A stretch of DNA of 64,000 nt from Oikopleura dioica (GCA_907165135.1 OU015568.1:7068001-7132000), one strand, 5' to 3'. Counted from the stretch's first letter, positions 2,885 through 49,515 are shown. Notes: generated by a model not told the origin, from the letters alone. Numbers and translations are program-made.

Positions 2885-3900
2885 CTATTTCTCCGCTGTT
2901 GTGATGCCGTAGTGCTGGAGCAGCTGTTGAAAAATGTCGACATCGTCAAGAAACTCGATTCTTTCAATGTTTTCTCGATTTTCGAGGGCAAGATAGATTT
3001 CGTACATGTCCTTACAATCTACATGTCTGAAGCCAACTCTTTCAAATCGCTGGATCTGTGTTGCTTTCGACAAACAAGCGTCGATTCCGTCCAAGCCACA
3101 TCCTCTTTGGACCAAGTTCTCAAGCATCACTGTTCCGAATCGATCATTTAAATTCAGCTAGAGACCGTTTTAGATTCATTTTGAAAACGGAAGGCTCCAC
3201 ACCTGTTCATAAGAAATGACCTTCAAGTTTTCGAAATCGTCCGCTGCAGCTTTGAGGAAACGCCCAGACGTTTCCGTCGGCATATAAACTAGCACACATT
3301 CGAATATGAGACAGACGTCTGTCTGGTCGTCGATTTGGTACTCTTCCTTGATTTCTTCAATCAATTTCGCACTTTCTTCCGAACGCTTCATGTCGAGGAC
3401 TCGTATTTGATAGGCGTCCGAGGCGAGTTTACTGTCAGTTATCTTCAGATTTTGCAACGAACTGACAAGTGATTTAGCAGCTGGCATTCTTAGTCGTCGA
3501 ATTCGCTGGCGAACGACCGCTTCCATGTCCAGATCAAACCACAGATCCTCTCCATCCTTGAATAGCCCTTCGCTCTTGGCCCACCAAAAGGTCGTATCAA
3601 AACCAGCGCCGCAATTGATCACAACTTTTCTTCTTGACGCATTTTTCTCGTAAAAGCGACGCAATTCCTGACGCGTTCCTTGAACACGTGCCCATGTTCC
3701 ACGCGCAATTTCTGGGCTCTTCCTTTCTGTATCTGTTCCTCGAGAGAGAAGCTTCAGAAGTGCGTCATCTTCGTAGTAGCCATGTTTGACTGAAGGAACA
3801 ACGCGTCAGAACAGTTTTTTCCAGGATCTCTTTTTGAACCTGCGTAAATTTTGCACGAAATGGCGTCCACAGCCGTCGCCTGAATGGCTTCCTCGCTCAT
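2885..3900 (-). CDS. LCMT1: Leucine carboxyl methyltransferase 1 (PP2A methyltransferase)
   Basis: MSEEAIQATAVDAISCK...KSPEIARGTWARV, VINCGAGFDTTFW, LIFECVLVYM, SYEQV, IEFLDDVDIFQQLLQHY. Confidence 0.92.
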
Positions 3901-4022: not shown

Positions 4023-5597
4023 TCAGGGCAGTTTTAAGTTCAGATTCTTGAGCGATAGATCGTCGGCGTTTGCTTCTGGCTCTTTGATTTGGATATTTTC
4101 GAGGCTGTGATGCATGTTTTCGAGGTTCTTTTTCTGCTGCGCGGCGCAGAGAATCTAAAAAGGGGTTCAAAAGAAGGAGCAAGGCTGAGAATCTACCATT
4201 TCAAGACTGGCGATAGTCTCGTTGTTCTTGATGCGCTTTGGGATCTTGTCGACCATGGCGATGGGAATACGGCCCTGTTTGTCTTCTCGCGTCGGGTCGG
4301 CTCCGTGGTTCAGCAAGATCCTCACTAAAAATAGCGATTGCTCTTGAACCGCACGGTGCAGAGGAGTCAGCCCAAATCGAAAAGTCTAAAAATAAAAAAA
4401 TAACATCAATTTTCCAAAAATAACGCAACAATAATAGAATAAACAAGATAACACTTTTTGACTTACTAAATTAGGATTGGCGCCTTTCTCAAGCAAAAGC
4501 TCTGTGTAGTAATTTCGTTCGGAAGTTCTTGCGCACTGCATGGCTATTTCAAGGAGGGAGAAGCCCCTGTCGTTGACGAAATTGGGGTCGCCAGTTTCCA
4601 AATATCTGTAATCGGATTAATCCTGCTTCGTAGAATGACCTTTACCTGTCGAGCATGAGCGGGTTATTTTTGACGATCGCCATGCCCGGATTTTCAAAAC
4701 TATCGTCATTTCGACTTTCCCCGAGTTCTTTCTCTATTCGAACTTCTTTCCTCAAATCCGCAATCATCCTGTTCACCGCTCCTTTCATCGCTGCTTCTTC
4801 CCACGCTGCTGCAGCCGGGTTAAAAGGCCTCGCAGTTCGGTTGAATCTATTTCCTTTCAGTGCCTTGACGATCTTTTCCGCCGTTTTCTTTACTTCCGCG
4901 CTCTTCGATTCCTTGTACATTCTCATCGCAATATCCACCGGCTTCAGTCCGTGCTTGTCTTTGGTCACCATGCTCGCGCCGGAGGCAAGAAGAGAGGTAA
5001 CCGTGGCGAGTTGAAGACTTCGCACAGCGCGGTGGAGAGCTGTTTCCCGTTCTTTTCCGTTCTTTGTGTTCAGAGTCTTCGGCCGCTTTTTCAAAAGATA
5101 TTCGACGACTTCTTGGCGGTTCGAACTGACGGCAAGATAGAGCAACGAGCATTGCTGGTACTTGCCAAGACGAGCGACGTAGTCAACTTCTGAAATGATG
5201 ATTTAAGATAATTCTAAGAAGAAAAAACCCGAGTACCTTTTGGATTTTCTTCGAAATGAGCTTCTATTTCTCCGATTTCTCCTTTTTGAATCAATTTCGG
5301 AAGACTCTGCTGCTCCTCGATGATTTCGTCGACGGTGATTTTCTCCGCGTTTGGAAGCTTCTCGAAGACCTTCAGCATCATCGGTTGGTTAACAGGATCA
5401 ACTACACAGGAGAAGCCCTTTAATTTTCTTTACACTTTCCAAAATCTGGCGGAAAGCCGGGAAACTGCTTCTTTACCTGAAAAAACTTCGCCTTCAAATC
5501 GGAAAAAATGAACTTCCGCTTCGTCTTTTCGGTCGAATTTCAAAAACTTCATGTTCATTTGTCCACACTGGGCAATGAAGATTCTGTCGTTCGGCAT
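4023..5597 (-). CDS. Ankyrin-repeat protein, about 6 exons
   Basis: Repeated ankyrin motifs: LLYLAVSSNRQEVVEYLL, ETALHRAVRSLQLATVTSLLASGA, GFSLLEIAM...LLLEKGANPN, GLTPLHRAVQEQSLFLVRILLNHGADP. Canonical introns join them in frame. Confidence 0.8.
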
Positions 5598-8994: not shown

Positions 8995-10465
8995 TTATTG
9001 ATCAGGAAGATCTGTACAGTTAGAACCAAGTGCTTGTCTTAAATCTCGCAAGTTGGTAACTCCGATCAAATGAGAAACGACCCCGCCGACGACGAAAATG
9101 TGGAAAATGTTGTGAGAGCATCCTGAAAGAATATCGTTAGACCGAGGTGACCCGTGGAAGAATGTGATTTCAAAGCTAAACTCGTGAGTTTCTTTACCAA
9201 AAAGATCGAATTTTCCGGGGAAATCCGCTTCCGGCTTTTGAGTTGCGTACAGATATGTTCCGAACAAGTATGAGGCCGCCATGATCACGATCCATTTCAG
9301 CTGACATTCCTCCCAGGCGTTTACTACACCAACTCTGAAAGTCGAAATTTGGAAAGTTTCTTCTTCTGGAACATATGTTTACCTGGCACAAGCGTGGAAG
9401 ATCGGAATCATGCTAGACATGGCCAGAGCAATAAAAAGACATGCGCGCACAACGCGGTATTCTGGTGTACTGAATCGTTGCCACTGGGTAAAGACCATCG
9501 TGAATAGTCCAAGGACGGAGAGGCACGAAATGTAGCTGAGCTGGGACTGAGGCATGCAGTAGAAGTTGTAGTAGATCCAGGGAATGAAGCTACCTGAAAA
9601 CTGCTTACATAACTGGCCGTCTTTGACAGATTTACCCATAATGAGAAGAGTGATTCCACAAAAATCGAGCCTTCCAAAAATCGACGAAATCTTCCTTGAA
9701 TGAGCAAGAAAAGTATGAAACAATGCCGAAAGAAATAAACATAACCAGGCGAAGAAAACTGTCGATGAAATGAAAAAAGTATTCAAAATATATATTTTCG
9801 TCATTTTCTCTTGCATTTCAGACCTGACCAAAAAGTCCGATAATCTGTTTTTCTTCGATTTGATTCACGAAGTTTTCTGAAGACAAGGAAGAGTGCGTCA
9901 CGATGAAAACAGCGAAGAAGACCGAGGGCAAGAAGTGCGTCTGAAAATCAGCTTTATTTAACCCAACAGCTCATTTTCTTACCCAAATGTTGATCGTTTC
10001 GTTATGCCATCGGAAACACGAAAGCAAGGAATATTTGAAAGAATGCATCGGCGCTCGGTACCATTTTTGAATGAATTCGTTGTCTTTTTGCCACTCTTCG
10101 AGCTCATCATATTTCACTGGAGAAGAATGAGGAAGGACGTAGCACGGAATTAAAACTTACGTAAACGTAGCCAATCTGTTGGTGCTTCCTCTCGGCTGAA
10201 AAGAGTTAGAATTTCCAGCAGTTAATGCTGTAAGTTCATCTGATTATCCACTAAGGGAAAAAATATCTACGGAAGATCTTACATGTCTATATTTGAGGAT
10301 TCCTCCTGCTCAGCTGACCCAGTCGATTCTTCTATTTCCGGTGAACCATCTCAAGTTGGTTGAATATTTGTCAAAAACTAAAGGTTAATCGGCTTAAAAT
10401 GAATATGCGACCATAATATTCAACCAAACTTCTTCCATCGACGGTGGGCTCCGTTCGCGCAACAT
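8995..10465 (-). CDS. ADIPOR: Adiponectin receptor / PAQR family 7-TM protein
   Basis: EEWQKDNEFI..WYR, SCFRWHNETINIWTH, SALFHT, RLDFCGITLLIMGSFIPWIYYNFYC, PE..FPGKFDLFGCSHNIFHIFVV. Start codon tentative. Confidence 0.9.
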
Positions 10466-26040: not shown

Positions 26041-29000
26041 TCAGCCGACATTGCCGCGCTCAAGGTCCAGCATCAGCGCTGCTATCGACGTTATTCCTGC
26101 GTTGTAATCTCAAAAAAGCATTATTGGGCAGTTCAAGGGATGAATGTACCTAATGCAACTTCGTTCCTCACGAAGTCTGTTCGGTTATTGACAAAGATAT
26201 CGTTCTCATCAGGACCTCCGACGAGCGCGCCGAGGAGAACTTGTGGATTAGGTCGATCGTTCTGAAAGAAATGTATTTTGAACTTTGGAAAGAATATTTT
26301 CCTACCCTGTATGCTTCCCAGCTGCATGGTCCTATAAGAGAGCAGCTTGCAGCCCGATGGTGTGGACGGTCAGGAAAGTTTTTTCCATAGCCGACCAAGA
26401 AACTTCTTCCTTGTCCGCCCAATATGTAGTCAAGCTGAATTAGAACATATAGACACTATTTATAGACGCTTTCTTCACAGCTGAGTCTAGGACTCCCCTC
26501 GGCCGCTCGGAATCAGCGGTTATATTGCGGCATTTCCAAGCCTATCGGAGAATGACTCGTCTGCAGATGACCGGCAGACCGACAGACTCAGCTGGCGAGG
26601 ATAGTCTCAGTGATTCCACTTTACCTGCGACATGGCAAATTTTCTATAATTCGACTGACGTATCGAGTCCATTCCCATCAGCGTCCCAGCTCGGAGACAG
26701 ATGTATGCGATGTTCAGCGCATGGCGTAGAACACCCCACTTTTCGATGAACAACAGTCCTCCAGGAGTGTACTTTGCACCTCCAGTTGGCATGTTATAAT
26801 CGCAGAATGTACTGATATCCGCTTTATACTTTGCATTGTCGGGATTCAGCTCTGCCATCAAAAGTTGGACTCCAGCATGTTTTTGGTCCCAGTTAAAGGA
26901 GTCGACTCTTTTATCGAGTTGGAATACAGAGTATGCGGATTTCGCTCTTTCAGGAGATAGAAAGTCAAATATGGAAATAGGGTTCTTTTTTCATTTTCTA
27001 TCCTTTCCTGTTCATGTACTTTATTTTGTCGATTTCAGTCTTGAAATATTTTAGAATCGACCTCGTCAAATGCCTTTATTAGTCAAAATACCTTTGAGGC
27101 CTTGTAAAGCCACAATGCTCCCCAAGCCAGCTCATCAGTGTAATCGTTAGATGGGTAGTAATCTGATGAAGTTTGAAGAAAATGAAATTGTTCAAGAATG
27201 TTATTTTGAAATTTACAAAGAGATTATCAAACTCTAATCTTTGACCTCGCGAACTACATCGGAGTACTTGCCCCTGTGTTTATCGCCATAATCGTAAATT
27301 TCTTTAGCCTTAAACCAACACTTGGAAGCCAGGGTCTCATCCGACACGACCATGGAAGCTGCAGCCAGCGCACCAGCTACTTCAGCAGCAAGGTCCGTTC
27401 CGTGAGTCCACTGCGTCACTTTCAGGCATGGGCGAACACTGTTTTGGTCCTGTCCGGCGGTTTTCTCAGTGCTCTATCTCATGGAAAACTTGCGCTAGTA
27501 TAAAGTAAGAACCTCAGATGACGCAGATGATGATTTTAAGCTCCAGCTTCCGGGATTTGTGTCGTCTTTACTGACAAAAGTAGATCGCGGAAAATTATAT
27601 TCTGAAGAAGCACTGACTGGGAAACCTATCAGATCTGTCATAAATTGAAACGGAAAAGTTATGTCAGGTCAGCACAGAAAAAGAAAGAATCATCATTAGG
27701 CCATGATCATTAGGCAATGGAAATCATAGAAGTTCCTTATAAATGATAGGCGAAGCACTGAGTAGAAAACCTTTCCTGGGGCCGTCCCCAGTATTGATGA
27801 TCAATTTCAGGATCTCCTACGATGGCATAGACCTCTCTAGGGGACGGATTTGTTTTGAGCAAATATTCTGCTCCATGCGTTATGATTTTCGACAGGTCTG
27901 CCCAACGCCCAACACTCTCAAGTGTTGATCTTTGAGAGGCTGTTAGAATTGATATTAATGTCGCTTTCAATCAGTAAGTTGTAGCCTTTCCTATGTTCAA
28001 TTGCGCCCCAGGAGAGCATCGTCATCGTCCACGCCAACGGGAAGGTGTATTTCATAAAGTCGCCAGCTTAAGAAATTGTTATTGAAAGGCTATTGATAAT
28101 GGTTTTACAGTCGTAAAAGCCTCCACTAAGATCCACCCCACATGGTCGACCATCGTTTTCGTGTGCGCTCAGCCGCCAACGGACAGGATGATCGATAGGC
28201 AACTTGACGGCGGCTTCAGATTAGTGTTTTGTTTTTAATATTAATCAAACTCTTTTAAAACATTTGCTTTTACAGCCGATTCCCTTTCCAGACATTTGAG
28301 AAAAGTAAAAGAGTGAAGAAAGTTTGATAATGGACGTCCAATCATGACAAGAGTACCGTTCAAACTTGACAGTAGGACGAGGCGTAGGAGCTTCAGTTAC
28401 TCTTTTTGGATAGAAATTATGTTTGATCAGCAAAATGTAGGTTCTGCTATGTAACTACCTTTCCTTGAACTTGGGTGTCAGATGATGTCTCCGAGACGAC
28501 ATGAGAAGGAGTGGGATGTTCTGGAGAGCCATGCGCATCATAACTCTTGTAATAGCCTTCTGAAGAAAGCACTGACTGCGCCCTGGAACTGCCAATTCCA
28601 GTGGGGTCATACGTCAATTGACAACTAGACGAGTCGAATTTGAACATCCTTCTGATAGTCGTCGATAACTTCAGCCCGTCTATTGTCACACACCAACATA
28701 GGTTCATCTTTGGCCAGCACTGACTCGGGCTGAAATCCCCATTTTCAAGGCACGCGTGTCGAAAACAGCTTGGCTTGAATCATTCTTAGTTACGGAGATG
28801 AATCAAGTTACTGAATACCGTTTTGCATCGCATTTTCTCCGCAATGCTGCGTTTTTCGCACTTTGTAAAGGTCCTCTTTGTTGTTGGCACGGTAGTCGTT
28901 GTTGTTGTCGGTCGCGTTGTTCTTTTACGGGGCCATATCTTTTTCATTCTCTCCATGAATTGAGAAAAAAAATCAATAAAATTTTGCTGTTGAGACTAAG

Positions 29001-31260
29001 CTGAAATATTCAGATTCTCCATTGGCCCCTTTCCTTACTTCACCAAAGGAATTCATGATAATTTCTGTCTGGGTGCTTTCTTCGAGTAGCTTCAGTCGCT
29101 GATTGATTTCATTTAGCGTTTGTTGCGCTCGTGAATTGAAAACTCCAGATACACCGGCAAGATTTCCACTGAAGTTGATGTTGTTGCCTCCTTCAGACAT
29201 TCCCTTGATCAGGTTTGAGCTCAAGTTTGCGTACGGATCAGCAGTTGTTTTCGGCTGTGGAGCCTCTGTCGGGTCACGCCCAAATAAAGATGAGTCGAGC
29301 CAGGATAATTGGGATCTGTAATTATCTTTAAACATAGCTGCATTGTTCCATTTGATACTTTCGGCTTGAGAATCAGCTTGTTGCTTTCTGTCATTGACTG
29401 GATCTGTATACGACTTTACAGATGAGGCCCCTTCTGGCTTGGGCAAATTTGAGAAGCCCTCGTTGTAACTGACTATATTTCGGGAAATGCCCTCGTCGTA
29501 GTTAGCGTTTGATCCGTCGGGATACCAAATTGTCCCCAAAAGAGCTACGGCCGGTTGAGGAATCATTCCAGGAGGCATCCCAGGAGTTCGATCGAACTCG
29601 ACCATGATTCGCATTCGCATCATTGTTCCCTGAAGTCGCACGCCGTTCCAGTGGTTGTTGTGCAGCATGGCTGTTACTCCATCGGACGGGCTTTGGACTG
29701 TCGGCTCGTATTCCCAATTTTCTAGTTTCGAGATCGGCATTGAAAACTTCAGCGTCATTGACCAGCCATCAACATCTCGAGTGACAGGGACGTAAAGAAT
29801 GCCAATGTATCCGCCGTCTGTATCTGACTCCCATCTCGTCTCTGTAAAAAATTTGTAGTTGGGATAGTCTGGCATGTCAGGGTCAAATTCAAGCACGCCG
29901 TCGCCGTCCAAGTCTACGTATTTGTCAGGATTTTTATTTTTGAACTCCTGTCTGTCTTTTTCTCCCATGGCATGGAATAGTGCTCCTTCTGTCTCTCCTT
30001 CCCACTGGTCGGAAACTTCAGCGTTGAACGGATTTCCTGTCGTTCGAACTTCTGGCGGCTTTTCGATTCGGACCTCTCCTCGTGACTGTGAGACCATTCC
30101 ACTTCGAACATCATCCGAACGGTAGGAATTCTTAATCATGGTTTCCTAAATAAATAACGTCAAAATCATTTCTTCTGAAGGTAACTCTGCTGATTATTAC
30201 GCTTTTTTTATAGGAAACCACGATCCTGATAGTTTAGCAAGCTGCGTTCTCCGTTTCCATTCGAAGAAAAGCCAGCGGTTTGCTGCGGGCCAGAAGAATA
30301 TCGCTCAAGGAATGTATCGGAGTTTCGCGCCTCTGCCATTCGTTCGTTTTGCTGACTTTGCTGGAGCAATTGTCTTCTAGCACTTTCCAAGCGCGACGAA
30401 GAATCGAATTGAAACTTCTGCGTTTGAAAAAAGATAGGAGCTCTAGTTGTTGGTGCGTAAATCTTCGTACTTTGAGTTGTCGGCGGGATGGTGGGCCGAG
30501 TCGTCCTCCAAGATGGTCCTGTGGGCGCTGGTGTTCCTCCTTGATCCCAGAGATTGGCTCCGTTCCATTCTGGAAGACCCTGCGGTTCACGAGCTGAGGG
30601 AGCATTGACCGTATTCGAGCTTCGAATATTCTCTTGCGGAATGAATCTATCTAGTCGGTCGAATGATGATGCAGTTGGTTGAGTTTGAGATACCCCTTTC
30701 CATCCGTTTGCTTCTGATACAGAGGAAGTGTAGCTGAAAGAACTTGATTCTTGGCTGGAAAAACTGGAAGTTTGTCTAGAAGCTGATGATCTGGCTGGAT
30801 CGATTCCTCCTCCAAGTTTTCCAAGCTCTTTGAAAGACGGTCCATGATGAGGACTCGACGGTTTTCTTGCAGAAGACCAACTTGAAGGCTGCCAACCACC
30901 ACCTGATGATGGCTTCGATACTTTTGAAACGAGAGAACTTGATGAGGGCCCTGAAGATCGTTGAAAACTCGGTCCGCTGCTTGAAGGGGCCTGATTCTGC
31001 GAATTAAAACTTCGTGAAGGGAACGACCTAGAGCTCTGAGCTGGAGGCGGAGCAGCAGCGTTCGGTGCTTTTGTTGGAGGCCTTTCGATAATGAGTGGTT
31101 TCTTGATTCCGAATTCCCTCTTTACATCCGCTCTCACAGGCTTAAATGGCCGCGTTTCGACTTCTCTGGAATTCGAGCGTCCTCCTGCTCCATAAATTGT
31201 AAAACCGCCATGAGTTGGATGTATAAAAATGAAGATTAAAAGGTTTAATAAACACTTCAT
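26041..31260 (-). CDS. Secreted modular GH9 endoglucanase: signal peptide, S/P/T-rich region, DxDxDG loop, CBM2-like module, thyroglobulin type-1 domain, GH9 domain; about 15 exons
   Basis: GH9 motifs SGKLP, DLSGGFYDSGDFMKYTFP, GTDLAAEVAGALAAAS, YTDELAWGALWLYKA, RSFLVGYG..PDRPHHRAASC and LLGALVGGPD...NEVALDYNAG. TY motif CLENGDFSPSQCWPKMNLCWCVTIDG. Signal peptide MKCLLNLLIFIFIHPTHG. The GH9 call is firm; linking the upstream exons needs non-canonical donors. Confidence 0.85.
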
Positions 31261-37379: not shown

Positions 37380-40300
37380 TCAGCGTGCAATATTCCGAGC
37401 GCCCGAGCAGCTCAGTTGGCGATAACGGTGTGTAGTACGCTTCGACTTTTTCATAAAGTAAAATAACGCGAAAGTGAAGAATGAAGAAATAATAATGATA
37501 ACAACCAGCTTGTCAAGCTTGGGCTCTGCAAAGTCGAACCCAGGAAGGGGTACGATGTCGTAAGGCTCGGCTGGAGAAGAGGTTTTCTATTTTTTAATAG
37601 AAATCGTCCATTTTTCATTTAAAAAATGGAAGATCATTATGATCAATCGAGATTCTCTAAGAGTCTTTACATGCACGAAATTAGTTCAGTATCAATAAGT
37701 GCTGGAAATAGTCGTTTAAAAAGCATGCAATGGGCTCTGTGATCGCGAAATCGGGAAAGTCTCATGCTCCTAAAGCTTTTACGGAACGAGCTCGAATTCA
37801 AGGTTGATTCGACAAACTCAAGGCCTGGAAAATGGTTCATTAGAATTTTCTACAACACTGAGAGTTGGACATAAATTGAACCGTAACTGAGGACGAAATA
37901 AGCTTTCGCGATGCTAGTTTTCGACCAAAAGCGAGCAAATACTTCAGCACTTGGAGCTCGGTTAACAACTAAAAACGAACAACACCAAAACATAACACGA
38001 AAAGAACGAAGAAAACCGCTCCTGGGTTGCGTAATGGGCGTGAACTGGAGCGGGAACTTTTGGAGATGCACTCTTCTTCGGCGGATCCAGTGCAAATGAG
38101 GCAGTTTGGGTTGCATGGCTTGCAAATGTTGAGCGCGGCGGTGGGGGAGGCTTGCTCCTGGGTTAGGTTCGTGTCTGAGCGGTAGGTTCCGAGGGGACAG
38201 TCGGAGAAGCAGGCTTGTTGGGTTGGGTCGAAGACTTGCGCTTTTTCGGACTAAAAATTAATTGAAAAATTCGTAAAATCGAAGAAGAGAATCTCCATAC
38301 CTCGCAGAGAAGCTCGTACTGATCTTTTCCAGTTCCATGGACGATCAGTTCAAATTTATCAATCGTTCCACCAAGGTTTCCTCCGACTAAATTTTCAATC
38401 CTAATCAGCCAAGGTTTCTCCGGCGCTAGGTAAGGCCGCTCATCCCACATGTGAACGGTGAGAAAGTGAAATCCGGTAAAGCCATTCATCGACTTATCGT
38501 GCGGTCTCCTGTCGAGAATGTTGGAAACTGTGCCACTAGGAGAGACGAGCGTGATTCGCAGACTACCACGATTTGGGTAAGACAACGAAATCTTAGCCAG
38601 GACGTGCTCGGTGTAGTGGATCGCCTTGATACACTCCGAGTTGATCTGAAACTCTTCTTCGAACACGCTCGAGCTGAAGAGCATTTGCTTTCTTTTCGTA
38701 ATAACTGGAGTCGAACACTTTCTTTGTTCAGGAACAGTGGTCCAATTTGCGGCTAACGAGACTAGAGCCCCAGCGTCCATCAGACCGTACCCATAATGAT
38801 GCGAGTAATCTCTGAAAAAATGACTTGGATTCGAAGTCGAAAGTTACTGAATTTACCTGCCAGCGCCGTTGACAGCCCAGTCCGTCGTCTTCAGCAAGCG
38901 TTTCTTGGAAGTATGAACGATGAGATGTTGAACATCTCGCCAAGTTAGATTCGGGTTAGCTTCCAAAACAAGCGCTAGAATTGCTGCAGCGATCGGAGCG
39001 GATGCTGACGTACCAGTGTGACTGAAAATATTGCAAATTAAGAGTGGTATGAGTGCTTACTTTTTGGTGCAGATCTTTCTCAAGTCTGTGGTAACGATTT
39101 GTCGCTCCCCCATTCCTCCGGAAGAATAAGTGGATGCGAGAGTAGATGCGCACGCTTCAGAGTACCAGGGCACGTTTTCTTTCTCCGAGGTCGATGAAAT
39201 GCTGACGGTGTAGATTGAATTCGTATATCCGTCACAGTTGCAGTTGTCCTAGGTAAGAAAAATACGTCAAATAAACATCGTTTACAGATGTGGACTTGGC
39301 TGGGCAGCCCAGGTAGCCCGCAGCTAGCTGGAAAGAGCGGCAAACTATATCTACGTTTGTGGAAAAAATCATCTGGCAATCATCTTTGTATATAAATTGT
39401 AACACACCTGGTATCGGCCTCCGTTGCCAGATGCCCAGACAAAGATGCTTCCTTTTCCTTTACGTCCGTCCATTGCGCCTGTGTGAAAGGCTGTGCGCGC
39501 TGCTCGATCTGGTCCATCGACCTAAGGGAATCATAAAATATCATTTAACGCCCGGATTACTGTTTCGCCGTCATCATCAGGCCCCCAGCTTGCGGAATAA
39601 ATGTCCACGTACTGCGGATTATGACCAATCGACTGCCCTTCAACCAAATCGGTTACATCTCCGTCCAGCATTCTGATCCCCCCAATTTTCGCGTTATAAG
39701 CAATTCCAGGGATGCAAACTCCATTGCCAAACTCACCGGCAACTTCTCCAGCGCATCGAGTCCCGTGACGATTACTTTCCTTCTTGTAGCCAATAACTTG
39801 CTCTGTCAGACGATAACGAGTTTCCGTCGGATTTCGGTAGGAATTTACGTCGGTGAAGTTGATACGCGAGTTTTCACTGTTGTACTGAGGCATTGGGTCA
39901 TCGTCTCCGCCGTTGATATCACGTGAGGCTTTTGCATCATAATTTTTGATCAAGTCCGGATGGTCCCGTTCGATCCCATCATCCAGGAGAGTGACTACTA
40001 CTCCTTGACCAGTGTATCCTTTTCCGACGGTTTTGAATCTAAATGATTAGTCGCCAAACTCGTGATGGAAGAAAGAATTAACGGATTCCTTTCATTTACT
40101 GAAAAATGACCGTTTTAAACCGTTTCCTAGGGCCCACGCTCCGGTGACATTCATATGTCGGATATCGCTGTCTACATTCGTAACTGCGTTTTCGTTTCTG
40201 TCCTCAAAGTCCGGGTTCATGTACCACATGTATTCGTACAGCGGATCATTGGGAGAAAAGTCAGTGTCGAGGAGGTCCCGCTTCACGCGTTTTTTCACTC

Positions 40301-44297: not shown

Positions 44298-47200
44298 ATG
44301 CCACGACAGTTTGGGTAAGTTTTTTCCGTTAGAATTTGATTTGAGAGCAAAAAATAGCCCGACATTGATAAAAAAATAAATTATTAGTTCTCTGACCCCG
44401 GCTAAGGGAGGGGTCATCGACTATAAAAAGAGGGATCACTCGTCCCGAGCAGCAGCTCAGGACAGGAGATTCGGGGAAACAACTATCGCAGGCGCCGGCG
44501 CATTCGATTCCAAAGCACCAATGTCCATTGTTTCTCTTCCTCTGAATCTTCGAGGCTCCGCTGCTAGGTAAACTTCTTCCCAATATTCCTCATCGCAATT
44601 TTCAGGGCTGTCCCCGTCGAGGGCACTGCCGATATCGGCAGCGATGGCGTCGTCGACATCCGCCTCAAGGGATCTCTTGGAGCTTTCCAGAGCCAGGATC
44701 GAGCCGCTTCTCGCGCTGCTGAGGCTCTTGAGCCAGTTGTGCCACACTACTTGAACATCACTCAACAGTACAACCGACCCAAATCATCCGAGCCTGGACA
44801 GAAATTCTACACCTGGGCCGGCAAAGGGAAGACCCCTGAGCCGACTCGACTGGGTCGATACGACATCCCAACTGGCAACTCAAACGTTATTCCAGATCTT
44901 GCTGAACACCAGGGAGATATCAAGGATGTTGCTTCTTACATTGCTAATCGAAAGGCTTACCCAAGCTACGATGAAGAAGACACCAAGCCTACTCAGTACA
45001 AGATGCGAACTCGACGACGAAAAGCTGAGGGCGCTGGTTCTGAGGGCCCTCTTGCGAAGGATCAGCCAGCTGCGGAACCGAAAGAAGATGCTCTTTACGA
45101 GCCAGTTACAATCAAATATCTTGCTCCAAAACCACCAGTGTTCGAACACGGTATTCGATCGCACACCATTTGGGAGAATATGACTGTGAAGTTTACTTGC
45201 CGTGTTGATGGTAGACCTACCCCATCTGTCACCTGGTACCACAACATGATCCCAATTCAGCCAGAGCTTCATGCTGCTGGAAAGTATAAGATCACTGAGC
45301 GAAATGGCGTCAATACTCTTGAAGTTTCTCGATGCCAGATTGCTGATGCTGGAACTTATCGAGTTTCTGTTCAGAACTTCAAGGGTGAACTTTCTAGCTA
45401 TGCTACTCTTGTTGTCAAACGATACGATGGTGGTCGATATGGCTACTACGACATCAAGTCTGGTTACAACATCAAAAAGCCTACAGACTACCCAGATGTT
45501 CAAGAACTCAATGTTCCTGGATACCCACGATTTGCTACCAAACTTTACAATCAATCTGTCTGGGAAGGCGATGCGATTACCTTTGCTTGCCATGTCGAAG
45601 GAAAACCCCCACCAAATGTCTTCTGGACTTTGAACGGGAAGTCGATCGAAACTGAACCCGAGCGTGTCCGAGTCTCTTTTGATGGCATCAAAGCCACCGT
45701 CTCGATTCTCCGAGCTTTCACTGACTACGAGGGTGAATGGTGCTGCCGAGCTTACAATAGCTGCGGTGCTGCTGTTTCCAAGATGTTCCTCTACGTCAGA
45801 GGCCGACATGGTCCGCCATCTGCACCAACCAATCTCGATGTTGTCGAAACTACTCGAGACCATATCATGCTTACCTGGAAACGACCTGGCTACATTGGTC
45901 ACTTTGGCGGTGCTGAAGTCGATGGCTACATCATTGAGTACGCAGCTGCTGGTTCTGCTTTGTGGACTCAGCTCTCTACCAAGCTCATCTCTCTTATGCG
46001 ATACCCAGTCACTGGCCTCGAAGAAGGAACTGCATATTTTTTCCGAGTAAGATCCGTCAACCGATGGGGTAAGTCTCAGTGGTGCAAAGCCATCGGGCCA
46101 GTCGCCTGTCGAGACACCGGTGCTGCCAGATGCGCTGCTGAAATCGCTGAGGATAAATTTTCCTTGATGCCTCCAGAGGCTGGAGATATTCAAGTTTATG
46201 AGGAAGAAGAGCCAGCTGTACCGGAAATTCCTGAAAACGTTCGGGTTCACTCCACTACTCTCGATGGAACCATCTGCGTTGCCTTTGACGCTGTCGAGGG
46301 CGATGTTGACGGCTACTTTGTCGAATATGCTCTTGCTAAGAAGAATGAATGGAGCACCTTCAATTCTGCTCCAATCAAGGTTGCTGGAGAGCCTTACCCT
46401 ATTTCCGGATTGGAACTCGGAAAGCAATTCCAGTTCCGAGTTCGAGCAAAGAATCACTACGGATTTTCTGAGTCCTCCTTGCCCACGGAAATTGTCTGGT
46501 GCGGTGAGCCACAGGAAGTGGAAGACGAAGAACAGGATGAAGAGCGAGAGGATTCTGGTTCTGATGAGGCTCAGGTTATCTCTGCCGATGCTCCAAAGTG
46601 CTATTCCGTTTGCACAGATGGTACTGACTTTGAAGGTCGATACCGAGGTCCTCCTACTCCTCCTAGATCCGTCAACTGGGCTAAAGCTACTCGAGAGTAT
46701 GTTGAAGTCACATGGGCTCCACCAGGGAAATCTGGAGGTGAACAAGTCGCCTACTACTTGGAGAAGCAAAAGCTCGGTTCTGGTGTCTGGGAATTCTGCA
46801 ACGAGAAGGCGATCGCCATGAACCACTACATCGTGAACGAGCTTGATATGGGCGAGAAATACATTTTCCGAGTCCGAGCTGTGAACTCCAAGGGTTCGTC
46901 TGGATTTTCCGAGCCATCTGAGCCAGTGATTGCTTATGATGGAATTCGTCCCCCAGCTTGGTACGGAAACGCCTTGTCTTTCTTCCGTGTCTCGCGATTT
47001 GATGGAAAACCTGATGTTACCAAAACCTCCGTCAAAGTTTCCTGGGACGAGCCTCAGAGAGATGGCGGCGCGCCAATCATCGGATACTATCTCGAAGTTC
47101 GAGAATACGGTGGCAAGTGGAAGCAAGTCAACAACAAAGCATTTACTCAGCGACACTTCACCGTTGACGGTCTTACTCCTCAGCGATACTACCAGTTCCG

Positions 47201-49515
47201 AGTCAAGGCTGCCAACATTGTCGGTTGTGGTGCTTACATTAACCTTCCAGGCCGAGTTTGGACTGATGATCCAGCTGCTCCTGGACCCGCTGATTGGCTC
47301 GAATTCACTGGCATCGGTGAAGATTGGGTTGAACTCAAGTGGGAAGCCTCCAAGGATCTCGGCGACGGCGATTTCAAAGGATACGTTGTTGAAAAATGCA
47401 AAGAAGGCACTGATCTCTGGATTCCAGTCAATTCTCCTGAAATGGCTGCTGACTGCAAGTACAAGGTCAATGGCCTTGTGCCTGGTCAAACTTACTTCTT
47501 CCGCGTTCGAGGAGTCTCTACTGTCGGCGAAGGTGTTCCAAGCAACCCATCTTGCTACGCTACTCCCGGTGTTGACACTCTTCAGGACCTGATCGACCGA
47601 CAGAATGCCATGTACGCCGAGCGACGACGACTTGAGGAGCTTGAAAGACAGCGACTTCGGGATCTTGAAGAGCTCGAGCGACAGATGCCATTCCTTCGAG
47701 AAATCCAGGACCAATGGATGAACACCGGCGACCGAGCTTTCTTCCTCTGCGAAGTCAAGGATCAGACCACCGAAGTTGATTGGTATCTCGGAAACTGGAA
47801 GGAGACTAAGATCGAGCCAACTGGCAAGTTCCACATCATCTCTGCTGGTCGAATTCGAATGCTCATCATCGACAAGGTCACAAACGAAGATCCTTGCATC
47901 GTCCACTGCGTCTGCCGATACAATGGATTCTGCTCGACTGCCGATCTTTGCGTTGATGGAATTGCTCCCGTCCGTTTCGTCAAGTACTTCGGCGACACCT
48001 TTGCCAACAAGGGCGATACCGTCGTTCTCCACTGCAACTTGTCCAAGCACTGCGCTGTTGTCAAGTGGAAGAAGATCACTGCTCAAGGTGAAATCGAAAT
48101 CACCGAGGAAGACATCAAGGATGGCAAATACGAAGTTGTCAGCCAAGGTGGCGCTCGATCCCTCATCATCCACGATATTCAGTACGAGGATATCGCTCAG
48201 GTAAAAACATTCAATTTAATTAAATCTTACAGGTTTGTAGTACTACTGCGGCGGTTTCGGTGGAGAAATCACTGCTAACGTCTGCGTTGACGGCATGGTC
48301 CCCATTTTCTTCGACAAGTACATCGAAGACGAGATCGATGTTCCATACACCGCCGAATACGTCGAATTCCGATGTGTTGTCAAGCTCAATCCCGTCAATA
48401 TGTGGGCTCAGCCTCACTTCCAGGTCTTTTTGAAAATGTGTTCTAGTAGACTAAACCTTTTTTAGTGGTTCCTCAACGGCGAAGAACTCGACCCCGACAA
48501 CGAACGAGTCGAAATCGTCTCTGTTGGCTGCGTTCGATCCCTCCGACTCTACTGCCCACGATACCAAGATTCTGGAGAGGTACAATTAATAATCTCCTTG
48601 TTTCTTTCATCCATATTTTCAGGTCACTGCCTACAATCCTGGTGGACAATGTACTGCCAAACTGGAAGTCCAGCCTCCTCCACCACCTCCACCACCACCA
48701 ATGCCACCAATGGAGGTAATCAAAGTCCTCCTTGTCTCACTCCTAACACTCTTTTAAAGGATATGGTCCTCAACTTCCGACAGCCTGTTATTCCCGAACA
48801 GCTCGTCGGTGGCTGCCGACTCTTCTGTGTCATCTCCAACCTCTCGGAAGATACCAGCGTGTCGTGGCTCAAGAACGCCAAGCCCCTCAAACAGGCCGAC
48901 AAATACGAAGTCGAGATCACGTAAGAATTGATTTTACAAACATCAAACAAGCATGAAATTCAGCCCCTCGACTGGTGTCGTCGCTCTTACCATCAACCCT
49001 CTCACCGAAATGGACATGGGCCGATACACCGCTTCCTTCACCACTCCACTCGGAATGTTTGACACCAAGGTCCACTACGACTTCACTGGCTCTTGTAAGA
49101 CTCTTTATCAGGGACAAAATGATAGTCATAAATTTTAGCATTCGATTCCATCTTCTACGCTTCGCAGAAATTGAAGGAAGAAGAAGAGAACCGAGAGGCT
49201 CTTCTCGATGCTGCCCGGGTAAGATCAAGCCTAATCACATGAAGCTAAAATAATTGATAGCAACGAGAACTCGCCGAACAGCAGGCCGCCCTCCAAGCCG
49301 AAATCGATGCTGCCAACACTGAGGCTGATGCCGAGGCCGAAGGCGAATCTGGCGAGGTCCCCGGCATTGAAGAAGCTGAAGCCGCCCCTGCTGAAGAAGC
49401 TTCCCCCGCTGAAGAGGCCGCTCCCGCTGAGGATGCTGCCCCTGTCGAGGAAGCTGCTCCCGCTGCTGAGGAAGTTGCCCAAGAAGAAGCTGCTGTCGAG
49501 CAAGCTGCTGAGTAA
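44298..49515 (+). CDS. MYOM: Myomesin-like M-band protein: head, 2 Ig, 5 Fn3, helix, 4 Ig, helix, Ala/Glu/Pro-rich tail
   Basis: The first Ig (PVFEHGIRSHTIWE...SSYATLVVKRY) matches myomesin My2. Five Fn3 domains follow two Ig domains, as in myomesin. The last Ig plus helix resembles My12-H12. Confidence 0.8.

What the first reader, a model, noticed from the sequence alone, without database searches (positions are those of the whole stretch)
26041..31260. Giant modular secreted cellulase: GH9 fused to CBM2-like and thyroglobulin type-1 modules
Seen, N- to C-terminal: signal peptide; about 330 aa of S/P/T-rich sequence; a DLDGDGVLE loop (29882-29914); a Trp-spaced module RWESDTDGGYIG...DGWSMTLKF...NWE...HNNHWNG (29585-29857); a helical segment; a poly-Thr linker; a six-Cys module ending QCWPKMNLCWCVTIDG (28615-28865); then a full GH9 domain keeping DSGD, HHR and NEVALDYNAG. 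Known: GH9 catalysis uses the two Asp of DxGD and the Glu of NEVA; CBM2 binds crystalline cellulose through surface Trp; thyroglobulin-1 (CWCV) domains can inhibit cathepsins or bind glycosaminoglycans; larvaceans secrete and inflate a cellulose house. Inference: an extracellular cellulose-remodelling enzyme with a built-in protease-inhibitor or matrix-binding module, possibly for house expansion or release. I know of no described GH9 plus thyroglobulin-1 fusion.
Basis: partly seen in the sequence, partly recalled or inferred. Interest (0 to 1): 0.85.

Follow-up and report, generated by a model that had tools for sequence, protein, structure and literature searches.

The report
Tunicate cellulase with CBM2 and thyroglobulin-1 modules
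This is a real 14-exon Oikopleura gene (the counterpart of the catalogued cellulase GH9-15) encoding a probably secreted cellulose-cutting enzyme with a cellulose-binding module and a thyroglobulin-type module, a layout also found in sea squirts, so it is not unique to larvaceans.

Summary
On the minus strand, 31260..26041 assembles into one 14-exon, 1327-aa protein. From N to C terminus it has a signal-like N-terminus, about 330 aa of S/P-rich low-complexity sequence, a CBM2-like beta-sandwich, a linker with one helix and a poly-Thr run, an 8-Cys thyroglobulin type-1 (TY-1) domain, and a complete GH9 domain. The GH9 domain keeps DSGD, DH, HHR and NEV.

Pfam supports TY-1 and GH9. It gives no CBM2 hit. 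CBM2 kinship is instead shown by profile-profile comparison with Pfam-verified animal CBM2 (98.9%, E 3e-17), and by an AlphaFold model (pLDDT 96) whose best PDB matches are CBM2 domains.

The gene is the ortholog of O. dioica GH9-15 (GSOIDG00017254001). A 2026 preprint lists it as a cellulase expressed with the anterior Fol programme.

The CBM2-like/TY-1/GH9 layout is not larvacean-specific. It occurs in Ciona "endoglucanase 13-like", in a Styela clava protein and in other tunicate-like sequences. The window's GH9 domain is sister to those in a tree (98/92). I found no paper that describes the TY-1 module.

The ascidian members have lost one catalytic Asp and the catalytic Glu. The window gene keeps both.

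Most likely function: a secreted, cellulose-anchored endoglucanase that processes house-filter cellulose. The role of TY-1 is unknown. Interest is moderate.

The parts
26041..31260 (-). Whole coding region: 14 exons, 1327 codons plus a TGA stop at 26043-26041. Exons are 31260-30226, 30130-29039, 28995-28819, 28773-28459, 28364-28284, 28202-28109, 28066-27986, 27939-27771, 27438-27239, 27162-27092, 26984-26625, 26434-26306, 26261-26150 and 26108-26041.
   Evidence: Spliced model with a single open frame. Junctions were guided by tblastn of homologs and by the Bergen GH9-15 sequence. The boundaries of exons 7/8, 9/10 and 10/11 are uncertain by a few codons.
31207..31260 (-). Signal-peptide-like N-terminus, residues 1-18 (MK, then an 11-residue hydrophobic core, then HPTHG).
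   Evidence: Hydropathy up to 3.0 over residues 3-13. Relatives P0043 and the ascidian proteins also start with a hydrophobic stretch. No signal-peptide predictor was available. The Bergen model's N-terminus is less hydrophobic.
30226..31206 (-). S/P/G/R/Q-rich low-complexity region, residues 19-345, without Cys. Probably a disordered, mucin-like extension.
   Evidence: Composition. No Pfam family at E <= 1. Conserved with Bergen GH9-15. A relative has a comparable 330-aa K/S/P/T-rich region in the same ORF (P0043).
30131..30225 (-). Intron 1, 95 nt, GA...AG, phase 0. It joins ...LLNYQ to NSYRSDD...
   Evidence: The Bergen model reads ...LLNYQ|NSFRAEDVRSG. The P0048 ORF reads ...GAV-NSYRQDD with no interruption. 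No in-phase GT-AG alternative exists.
29888..29914 (-). DLDGDGVLE motif (residues 418-426) in an acidic stretch that precedes the CBM2-like module.
   Evidence: Identical in the 68-69% identical relatives P0001 and P0048. In more distant relatives a C-x5-C loop takes its place. No Pfam hit. Low to moderate pLDDT in the exon-2 model. Calcium binding is only a guess.
29531..29875 (-).
   Evidence: phmmer hits fall on Pfam CBM_2 regions of other animal proteins. hhalign against animal CBM2 gives 98.9%, E 3.3e-17. AlphaFold pLDDT is 96. The top Foldseek hits are 6qfs, 1exg and 3ndy_E, all CBM2.
29042..29149 (-). Predicted long helix (residues about 673-708) at the end of an otherwise low-confidence linker (546-745).
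   Evidence: AlphaFold model of the whole exon-2 product: helix at residues 328-363 of the exon, pLDDT up to 89, with the rest of the linker below 50.
28876..28920 (-). Thr/Pro-rich linker (TTRPTTTTTTVPTTK, residues 735-749).
   Evidence: Translation. The ascidian homologs have comparable poly-Thr runs before their TY domain.
28621..28860 (-). Thyroglobulin type-1 domain, C755 to C819, with eight Cys. It is interrupted by intron 3 (28818-28774).
   Evidence: Pfam PF00086 at E 5.4e-09 on the second half alone. The family profile hits thyroglobulin, saxiphilin, IGFBP C-domains, the p41 fragment and Trop2/EpCAM in the PDB.
26044..28364 (-). GH9 catalytic domain, residues 874-1327, in ten exons.
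   Evidence: PF00759 on eight exon pieces covering profile positions 20-434/444. tblastn against animal GH9s. Tree.
28059..28112 (-). DSGD motif: D931 (28112-28110), S932 split by intron 6 (28108-28067), then G933 and D934 (28061-28059). This is the catalytic Asp pair.
   Evidence: The role of the pair is established knowledge for GH9 (Asp54/Asp57 in Nasutitermes NtEgl, Asp55/Asp58 in T. fusca Cel9A).
26160..26162 (-). Codon of Glu1302 in NEVAL, the predicted catalytic acid.
   Evidence: The exon piece aligns to 1ks8 residues 381-414, which places this Glu on residue 412. Glu412 as the acid is established knowledge.

Best explanation
The locus is the Oikopleura ortholog of GH9-15. It belongs to a tunicate-wide family of secreted modular GH9 proteins with the order signal peptide, (in larvacean-type members) a long mucin-like S/P-rich extension, a divergent CBM2, a Thr-rich linker, a TY-1 domain, and GH9.

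Proposed mechanism:
1. The protein is secreted by oikoplastic cells of the anterior Fol field.
2. The CBM2-like module docks it on crystalline cellulose microfibrils of the nascent house, in the food-concentrating filter rudiment.
3. The intact inverting GH9 site (Asp931/Asp934 as base, Glu1302 as acid) cleaves beta-1,4-glucan chains endo-wise. This trims or releases microfibrils and so controls their length and order. It would be analogous to KORRIGAN in plants or BcsZ in bacteria.
4. The disordered N-terminal region and the TY-1 domain tether or protect the enzyme in the protein matrix.

Shown here: gene structure, domain identities, an intact catalytic set, and orthology with the ascidian TY-GH9 proteins. 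Taken from a preprint: anterior Fol expression. Inferred: secretion, cellulose binding, endoglucanase activity, and the role in filter cellulose. Open: what TY-1 does.
For: - One open 1327-aa spliced frame.
- Exon 1/exon 2 continuity is supported by the Bergen model and by uninterrupted ORFs in relatives.
- GH9 and TY-1 are supported by Pfam.
- CBM2 is supported by profile-profile comparison, AlphaFold and Foldseek.
- DSGD, DH, HHR and NEV are all retained, as in active animal, plant and bacterial GH9s. The Glu aligns with residue 412 of 1ks8.
- The GH9 domain is sister to the ascidian TY-GH9 proteins at 98/92 support.
- The preprint names GH9-15 among markers of the mature anterior Fol pattern, together with oikosin5. 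It also states that GH9 genes are expanded in O. dioica and are presumed to control cellulose polymer length.
- The Fol region makes the food-concentrating filter, where oikosins coat cellulose microfibrils.
Against: - There is no biochemical evidence for activity, secretion or cellulose binding.
- Pfam does not call CBM2 on this sequence.
- Only two of the three Cex CBM2a face tryptophans align. W54 and W72 are matched, but Thr sits at the W17 position.
- The ascidian orthologs lack one catalytic Asp and the Glu, so the family's conserved role may not need catalysis.
- The gene ID and the domain names were not found in the held text of the 2012 house-proteome paper or its supplements.
- The expression statement comes from one scRNA-seq preprint and concerns the Bergen ortholog.
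- The Bergen model's N-terminus is not obviously a signal peptide.
Confidence: 0.6

Rival explanations
1. One reading: the enzyme remodels cellulose for house inflation or release, and the TY-1 domain acts as a built-in cysteine-protease inhibitor or as a glycosaminoglycan or matrix binder.
For: The TY-1 domain is genuine. Its family profile matches thyropin-type domains of saxiphilin and the p41 fragment. Heparan sulfate proteoglycans are needed for house inflation. The catalytic set is intact.
Against: Reported expression is in the anterior Fol field (filter production), not in a field tied to inflation or escape. TY-1 domains also occur in non-inhibitory proteins that the same profile hits, such as IGFBPs, Trop2/EpCAM and thyroglobulin. 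Nothing in the sequence tells inhibition from binding. The extra disulfide in loop 1 departs from the classical six-Cys thyropins.
Confidence: 0.15
2. It is mainly a non-catalytic, cellulose-binding matrix protein. On this view the conserved job of the tunicate CBM2-TY-GH9 family is to bind or cross-link cellulose, and hydrolysis is dispensable.
For: All four ascidian-type members (Ciona, Styela, P0026, P0028) have replaced the first Asp of DxGD, the His of DH and the Glu of NEV. A further relative on contig L003 has ADGT and EE at those sites and no detectable C-terminal GH9 half. Even so, the family is conserved.
Against: The window gene keeps every canonical catalytic residue despite a long branch of 1.2 substitutions per site. 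That argues for selection on catalysis in this lineage.
Confidence: 0.15
3. It is a digestive cellulase secreted into the gut to break down algal cell walls, as usually assumed for animal GH9 enzymes.
For: Animal GH9s are generally regarded as digestive. CBM2-GH9 enzymes occur in many non-cellulose-making invertebrates.
Against: The preprint assigns GH9-15 to the anterior Fol signature. The TY-1-bearing clade was seen only in tunicates, the only animals that make cellulose.
Confidence: 0.07
4. Exon 1 is a separate upstream gene, for example the first cistron of a trans-spliced operon. The cellulase would then start at the ATG at 30139.
For: Exon 1's frame ends at a TAA (30210-30208) only 68 nt before an in-frame ATG (30139). 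No in-phase GT-AG intron exists there.
Against: The Bergen model joins the two exons at LLNYQ|NS. The relative P0048 has one uninterrupted ORF across the junction, and P0043 carries signal peptide, low-complexity region, CBM2 and TY-1 in a single ORF. A protein starting at 30139 would have no signal peptide despite its disulfide-rich TY-1 domain. GA-AG introns are a known Oikopleura feature (own knowledge).
Confidence: 0.03

Closest known systems
Oikopleura dioica GH9-15 (GSOIDG00017254001), listed in bioRxiv 10.64898/2026.03.31.715263, SI2
   Same: The first ~400 residues shown in SI2 align colinearly. They share the S/P-rich N-terminal region, the same exon 1/exon 2 junction, and the EDVRSG...VRIEKPPEVRTTGNPF...DQWEGETEG stretch. 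The gene is annotated as GH9 and reported in the anterior Fol signature.
   Different: There are many substitutions and a different N-terminus (MTKIQAYYY... versus MKCLLNLL...). The window therefore comes from a different lineage or assembly than the Bergen reference. The preprint does not mention a thyroglobulin or CBM2 module: 'thyroglobulin' occurs 0 times in its text.
Ascidian TY-GH9 proteins: Ciona intestinalis 'endoglucanase 13-like' XP_026695442.1 (P0070) and Styela clava LOC120327569 (P0069)
   Same: The module order is the same: divergent CBM2, Thr-rich linker, 8-Cys TY-1, GH9. The GH9 domains form a clade with the window at 98/92 support. Shared signatures include WRxxAHxxDG, SGD, RPQ, RPC and YRKF.
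   Different: The ascidian proteins are 790-850 aa and lack the ~430-aa N-terminal extension. They have lost the first catalytic Asp, the DH histidine and the catalytic Glu. The window protein retains all of these.
Invertebrate CBM2-GH9 endoglucanases, e.g. Ptychodera flava XP_070574808.1 (P0023), Diadema XP_071510732.1 (P0029) and Biomphalaria endoglucanase 4 (P0088)
   Same: N-terminal CBM2 module(s) followed by a catalytically intact GH9. The window module is homologous to their CBM2.
   Different: They have no TY-1 domain and no long low-complexity extension. Pfam recognises their CBM2 directly. Their GH9 domains fall in another part of the tree.
Plant KORRIGAN (membrane GH9) and bacterial BcsZ (GH8): cellulases that act within cellulose production
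   Same: A functional analogy only. Each is an endoglucanase made by a cellulose-producing cell and is thought to edit nascent glucan chains (own knowledge).
   Different: KORRIGAN is a type II membrane protein without CBM2 or TY-1, and plant GH9s are a separate clade. BcsZ belongs to another GH family.
Thyropins (TY-1 protease inhibitors: p41 invariant-chain fragment, equistatin, saxiphilin Thy1 domains)
   Same: QC...CWCV core and overall TY-1 profile match.
   Different: The tunicate GH9 TY-1 has an extra Cys pair in the first loop. Inhibition has not been tested. No other TY-1 protein found here is fused to a glycoside hydrolase.

Membership tests
Glycoside hydrolase family 9 (PF00759) | Sequence match to the GH9 profile along its whole length | tested here: met
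   Eight exon pieces hit PF00759 (E 5.6e-04 to 1.2e-14) and cover profile positions 20-434 of 444. The best identity to another GH9 is 46%.
Glycoside hydrolase family 9 (PF00759) | Catalytic Asp pair (DxxD) and catalytic Glu (NEV motif) | tested here: met
   D931/D934 and E1302 are present. The Glu aligns with residue 412 of 1ks8.
Glycoside hydrolase family 9 (PF00759) | (alpha/alpha)6 barrel fold | not tested
   The domain is spread over ten exons. A spliced sequence could not be handed to the structure tool.
Glycoside hydrolase family 9 (PF00759) | Inverting endo-beta-1,4-glucanase activity | not testable with these tools
   Needs an enzyme assay.
CBM2 (PF00553) | Direct match to the Pfam CBM_2 profile | tested here: not met
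   No hit at E <= 10 on the module or on exon 2. The Styela ortholog's module gets a sub-threshold hit (E 0.017, 15.9 bits against a cut-off of 24).
CBM2 (PF00553) | Homology to bona fide CBM2 domains through intermediates | tested here: met
   phmmer hits (whole-library E from 6.7e-10 to 7.3e-04) overlap or adjoin Pfam CBM_2 regions in P0016, P0020, P0023, P0024 and P0029. hhalign gives 98.9%, E 3.3e-17. The best PDB sequence hits are 1exg and 6qfs, in register but not significant (E 0.4-0.5).
CBM2 (PF00553) | CBM2 beta-sandwich fold | tested here: met
   The AlphaFold model has pLDDT 96. The top five Foldseek hits are all CBM2 (6qfs, 1exg, 3ndy_E), with E from 1e-05 to 4e-04 and TM 0.55-0.65.
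CBM2 (PF00553) | Planar strip of three exposed aromatic residues (W17, W54, W72 in C. fimi Cex) | tested here: inconclusive
   In the profile alignment to 1exg, the W54 and W72 positions carry Trp (ENW, HWNG). The W17 position is Thr. The model coordinates could not be inspected.
Thyroglobulin type-1 (PF00086) | Profile match with the QC...CWCV core and the conserved cysteines | tested here: met
   PF00086 at E 5.4e-09, 35.8 bits against a cut-off of 20.6, on the 3' half alone. The six canonical Cys plus one extra pair are conserved across the tunicate family. PDB hits include thyroglobulin, saxiphilin, IGFBPs and p41.
Thyropin (protease-inhibiting TY-1) | Inhibition of cysteine, aspartic or metallo-proteases | not testable with these tools
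   Sequence does not separate inhibitory TY-1 domains from merely binding ones.
Oikosin / house structural proteome | Detected in the house by proteomics | tested here: inconclusive
   Neither the gene ID nor the terms cellulase, hydrolase or thyroglobulin occur in the main text or held supplements of PMC3390340. Absence from a text search is weak evidence.

The most novel reading that the evidence does not exclude
Tunicates, the only cellulose-making animals, may possess a lineage-specific CBM2/TY-1/GH9 family that arose in their common ancestor. On this reading, Oikopleura keeps it as an active, matrix-tethered cellulase that sculpts the cellulose scaffold of the food-concentrating filter. 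Ascidians would have turned it into a catalytically dead cellulose-binding protein. The TY-1 domain would couple cellulose processing to control of extracellular proteolysis.
Probability: 0.2. Interest if true: 0.7.

Novelty: new variant of a known kind. Interest (0 to 1): 0.4.

Why it matters
How animals that make cellulose control microfibril length and order is essentially unexplored. [quoted passage not shown]

This locus is a concrete, testable candidate. It is an apparently active, cellulose-anchored GH9 expressed in a filter-making cell field, and its ascidian orthologs look like natural catalytic-dead variants. The TY-1 insertion is, as far as my searches go, an undescribed accessory module for a glycoside hydrolase.

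The gene is already catalogued as GH9-15, and the architecture is visible in public annotations of Ciona and Styela.

Tried and rejected
- Pfam on exon 1, on exon 2 and on sub-pieces of exon 2 returned nothing, including no CBM_2, EF-hand or expansin.
- The DLDGDGVLE stretch as a folded calcium-binding loop is not supported. It has no family hit and low to moderate pLDDT. It is conserved only in the closest relatives, and a Cys loop replaces it in more distant ones.
- An AlphaFold model of the whole exon-2 product showed only the CBM2-like sandwich and one C-terminal helix as confident. I found no further domain.
- Literature searches for 'thyroglobulin type-1' + GH9 and for oikosin + thyroglobulin found nothing relevant.
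- A text search of the house-proteome supplements found neither the gene nor its domains.
- Rfam returned no RNA family anywhere in the window.
- Tandem repeat search found nothing in the S/P-rich exon.
- I searched for the C-terminal GH9 half of the relative on contig L003 and found none.
- The idea that exon 1 is a separate gene was rejected.
- The full O. dioica proteome appears to be absent from the protein libraries searched. Other O. dioica GH9 paralogs therefore could not be put in the tree. SI2 gives only the first ~400 residues of each, and I did not type them in.
- The organisms behind the Logan transcripts P0026 (SRR32906214) and P0028 (ERR6338309) could not be looked up.

Full report
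**What is in the sequence**

The window is animal genomic DNA with very short introns. ORF listing and three-frame translation of the minus strand between 31500 and 25800 show a chain of open segments. I read the DNA and joined the segments with the help of tblastn alignments of homologs. The result is a 14-exon model with one open frame of 1327 codons, from the ATG at 31260 to the TGA at 26043-26041.

Nine introns are GT-AG and 41-332 nt long. For four junctions no in-phase GT-AG solution exists. The homology-supported solutions there are GA-AG (intron 1), GG-AG (intron 5), GC-AG (intron 7) and an uncertain AT-AG (intron 9). G-start non-canonical introns are a known peculiarity of Oikopleura (own knowledge). 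The exact boundaries at introns 7, 9 and 10 remain uncertain by a few codons, but this does not affect the domain architecture.

**Is it one gene?**

Exon 1 ends in frame at a TAA only 68 nt before an in-frame ATG (30139), so a two-gene reading had to be excluded. Three observations exclude it.

- The Bergen O. dioica model GSOIDG00017254001 ('GH9-15' in SI2 of bioRxiv 10.64898/2026.03.31.715263) reads ...LLNYQ|NSFRAEDVRSG... This is exactly the junction obtained with the GA-AG intron.
- A 68-69% identical relative (P0048, P0001) has an uninterrupted ORF across the same point.
- A more distant relative on a 29-kb metagenomic contig (P0043 on L003) carries a signal-like start, about 330 aa of low-complexity sequence, the Trp module and the TY-1 domain in one ORF. 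GH9-bearing ORFs follow directly.

**Domain identities**

*GH9 and TY-1 by Pfam.* Pfam on stop-free exon pieces gives Thyroglobulin_1 (E 5.4e-09). It gives Glyco_hydro_9 on eight pieces that together cover profile positions 20-434 of 444. Nothing is found for exon 1 or exon 2, and there is no CBM_2 hit even at E <= 10.

*The Trp module.* A HMMER search of 1.84 billion representatives with exon 2 found 35 proteins. The distant hits match only residues ~90-210 of the exon. In several of them that region is one Pfam calls CBM_2: a Ptychodera flava and a Diadema GH9 protein, plus multi-CBM2 proteins.

Further tests point the same way:
- A profile of the tunicate modules against a profile of those Pfam-verified animal CBM2 domains gives hhalign probability 98.9%, E 3.3e-17.
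- The best PDB sequence hits of the tunicate profile are the C. fimi Cex CBM2 entries 1exg and 6qfs. They are in register but not significant on their own.
- An AlphaFold model of the module has mean pLDDT 96.
- Its five best Foldseek matches in the PDB are all CBM2 domains, with E from 1e-05 to 4e-04 and TM 0.55-0.65.

The module is therefore a divergent CBM2. Two of the three binding-face tryptophans of Cex (W54, W72) align with Trp, and the W17 position is Thr. Cellulose binding is thus plausible but not assured.

*The rest of exon 2.* A model of the whole exon-2 product shows no other confident fold apart from a long helix at residues ~673-708. The DLDGDGVLE stretch gets no support as a structured calcium site.

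*The TY-1 domain.* It runs from C755 to C819 and has eight cysteines: the six canonical ones and an extra pair in the first loop. This pattern is conserved across the family. The family profile hits thyroglobulin, saxiphilin, IGFBP C-domains, the p41 fragment and Trop2/EpCAM.

**Catalytic competence**

In an alignment of 32 GH9 domains the window protein keeps GGFYDSGD, DH, HHR and NEV, like the animal, plant and bacterial enzymes. The exon carrying NEVAL aligns to residues 381-414 of the termite enzyme 1ks8. That puts Glu1302 on residue 412, the known catalytic acid (the role is from established knowledge).

**Relatives and architecture**

Two word-indexed searches, one seeded with the N-terminal 380 residues of P0026 and one with a four-sequence family profile, found PF00086 + PF00759 together in three proteins: Ciona intestinalis 'endoglucanase 13-like' XP_026695442.1 (811 aa), Styela clava LOC120327569 (847 aa) and the transcript-like Logan contig P0026. 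The representative search had already found a second Logan transcript with the same layout, P0028. My own Pfam scans confirm the order as N-terminal module, TY-1, GH9. The Styela module gets a sub-threshold CBM_2 hit.

Among the best 120 GH9 proteins listed, no non-tunicate protein combined the two families. Hemichordate, echinoderm, mollusc and crustacean relatives have CBM2 + GH9 without TY-1.

In a maximum-likelihood tree the window's GH9 domain is sister to the four ascidian-type TY-GH9 domains, with support 98/92. Two caveats apply. The window branch is long (1.2), and no other O. dioica paralog could be included.

The simplest reading is that the CBM2/TY-1/GH9 fusion predates the larvacean/ascidian split. 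The long S/P-rich N-terminal extension is seen only in the larvacean-type sequences.

**An unexpected contrast**

All four ascidian-type members have replaced the first Asp of DxGD (by Q, V, H or V), the His of DH (by E or N) and the catalytic Glu (by S, G or A). The L003 relative has ADGT and EE at the first two sites and no detectable C-terminal GH9 half. These look like pseudo-enzymes. The window gene, despite its fast evolution, keeps the full set.

**Function**

The preprint states that GH9 genes are expanded in O. dioica and are presumed to control cellulose polymer length. [quoted passage not shown] The Fol region produces the food-concentrating filter, where oikosins coat cellulose microfibrils.

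I therefore favour a secreted, CBM2-anchored endoglucanase that trims or releases cellulose microfibrils of the filter rudiment, with confidence about 0.6. The alternatives are:
- a mainly non-catalytic cellulose-binding matrix role, suggested by the dead ascidian orthologs (0.15);
- digestion (0.07);
- a two-gene artefact (0.03).

The gene ID and its domain terms were not found in the text or held supplements of the 2012 house-proteome paper. That is weak evidence against a structural role.

**Novelty**

The gene is catalogued (GH9-15). The architecture is visible in public annotation of ascidian proteins. CBM2-GH9 is a common invertebrate layout. I found no paper that mentions a thyroglobulin type-1 module in a GH9 or in any cellulase. 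The active-versus-dead split between larvacean and ascidian orthologs appears unreported.

Noticed in passing
P0069, P0070, P0026, P0028 (ascidian-type TY-GH9 proteins); L001, L002: All four have lost the first catalytic Asp, the DH histidine and the catalytic Glu of GH9. They look like conserved pseudo-cellulases, in contrast to the window gene.
   Followed up: partly
L003:10001-13099: A metagenomic contig from a compact eukaryotic genome carries a relative with signal peptide, low-complexity region, CBM2-like module and TY-1 in one ORF. The N-terminal half of a GH9 domain follows (ADGT in place of DxGD, EE in place of DH). No C-terminal half is detectable before the next gene on the opposite strand.
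   Followed up: partly
window 30131-30225, 28203-28283, 27940-27985, 27163-27238: Four of the 13 introns have no in-phase GT donor (GA-AG, GG-AG, GC-AG and a doubtful AT-AG). The AT-AG solution at intron 9 keeps homolog spacing exactly. GC-AG or GA-AG alternatives there would delete 4-7 conserved residues.
   Followed up: partly
window 31207-31260 versus the Bergen model in SI2: The window's predicted N-terminus is strongly hydrophobic. The Bergen GH9-15 model starts MTKIQAYYYLIDPSYG, which does not look like a signal peptide. One of the two start annotations may be wrong, or the N-terminus has diverged.
   Followed up: no
window 44739-48278 (+): An uninterrupted 1179-aa ORF encodes Ig I-set and five fibronectin-III domains (DSCAM-like). 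A 1097-aa antisense ORF with no family hit overlaps it on the minus strand (44880-48173). The antisense ORF is probably a by-product of codon composition.
   Followed up: partly
window 38166-38780 (-), 9382-9831 (-), 3179-3664 (-), 4645-5145 (-): Neighbouring exons encode a proprotein-convertase P-domain, a PAQR/HlyIII-type receptor fragment, a leucine carboxyl methyltransferase fragment and ankyrin repeats. These are ordinary metazoan genes, and there is no second GH9 among the long ORFs scanned.
   Followed up: partly
window 27688-27719: A 14-nt unit repeated 2.3 times lies inside the one long intron (intron 8, 332 nt) of the gene.
   Followed up: no
P0071, P0072 (Ciona LOC100176349): Tunicate proteins with two tandem GH9 domains. 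Several of these domains also carry substitutions in the catalytic motifs.
   Followed up: no
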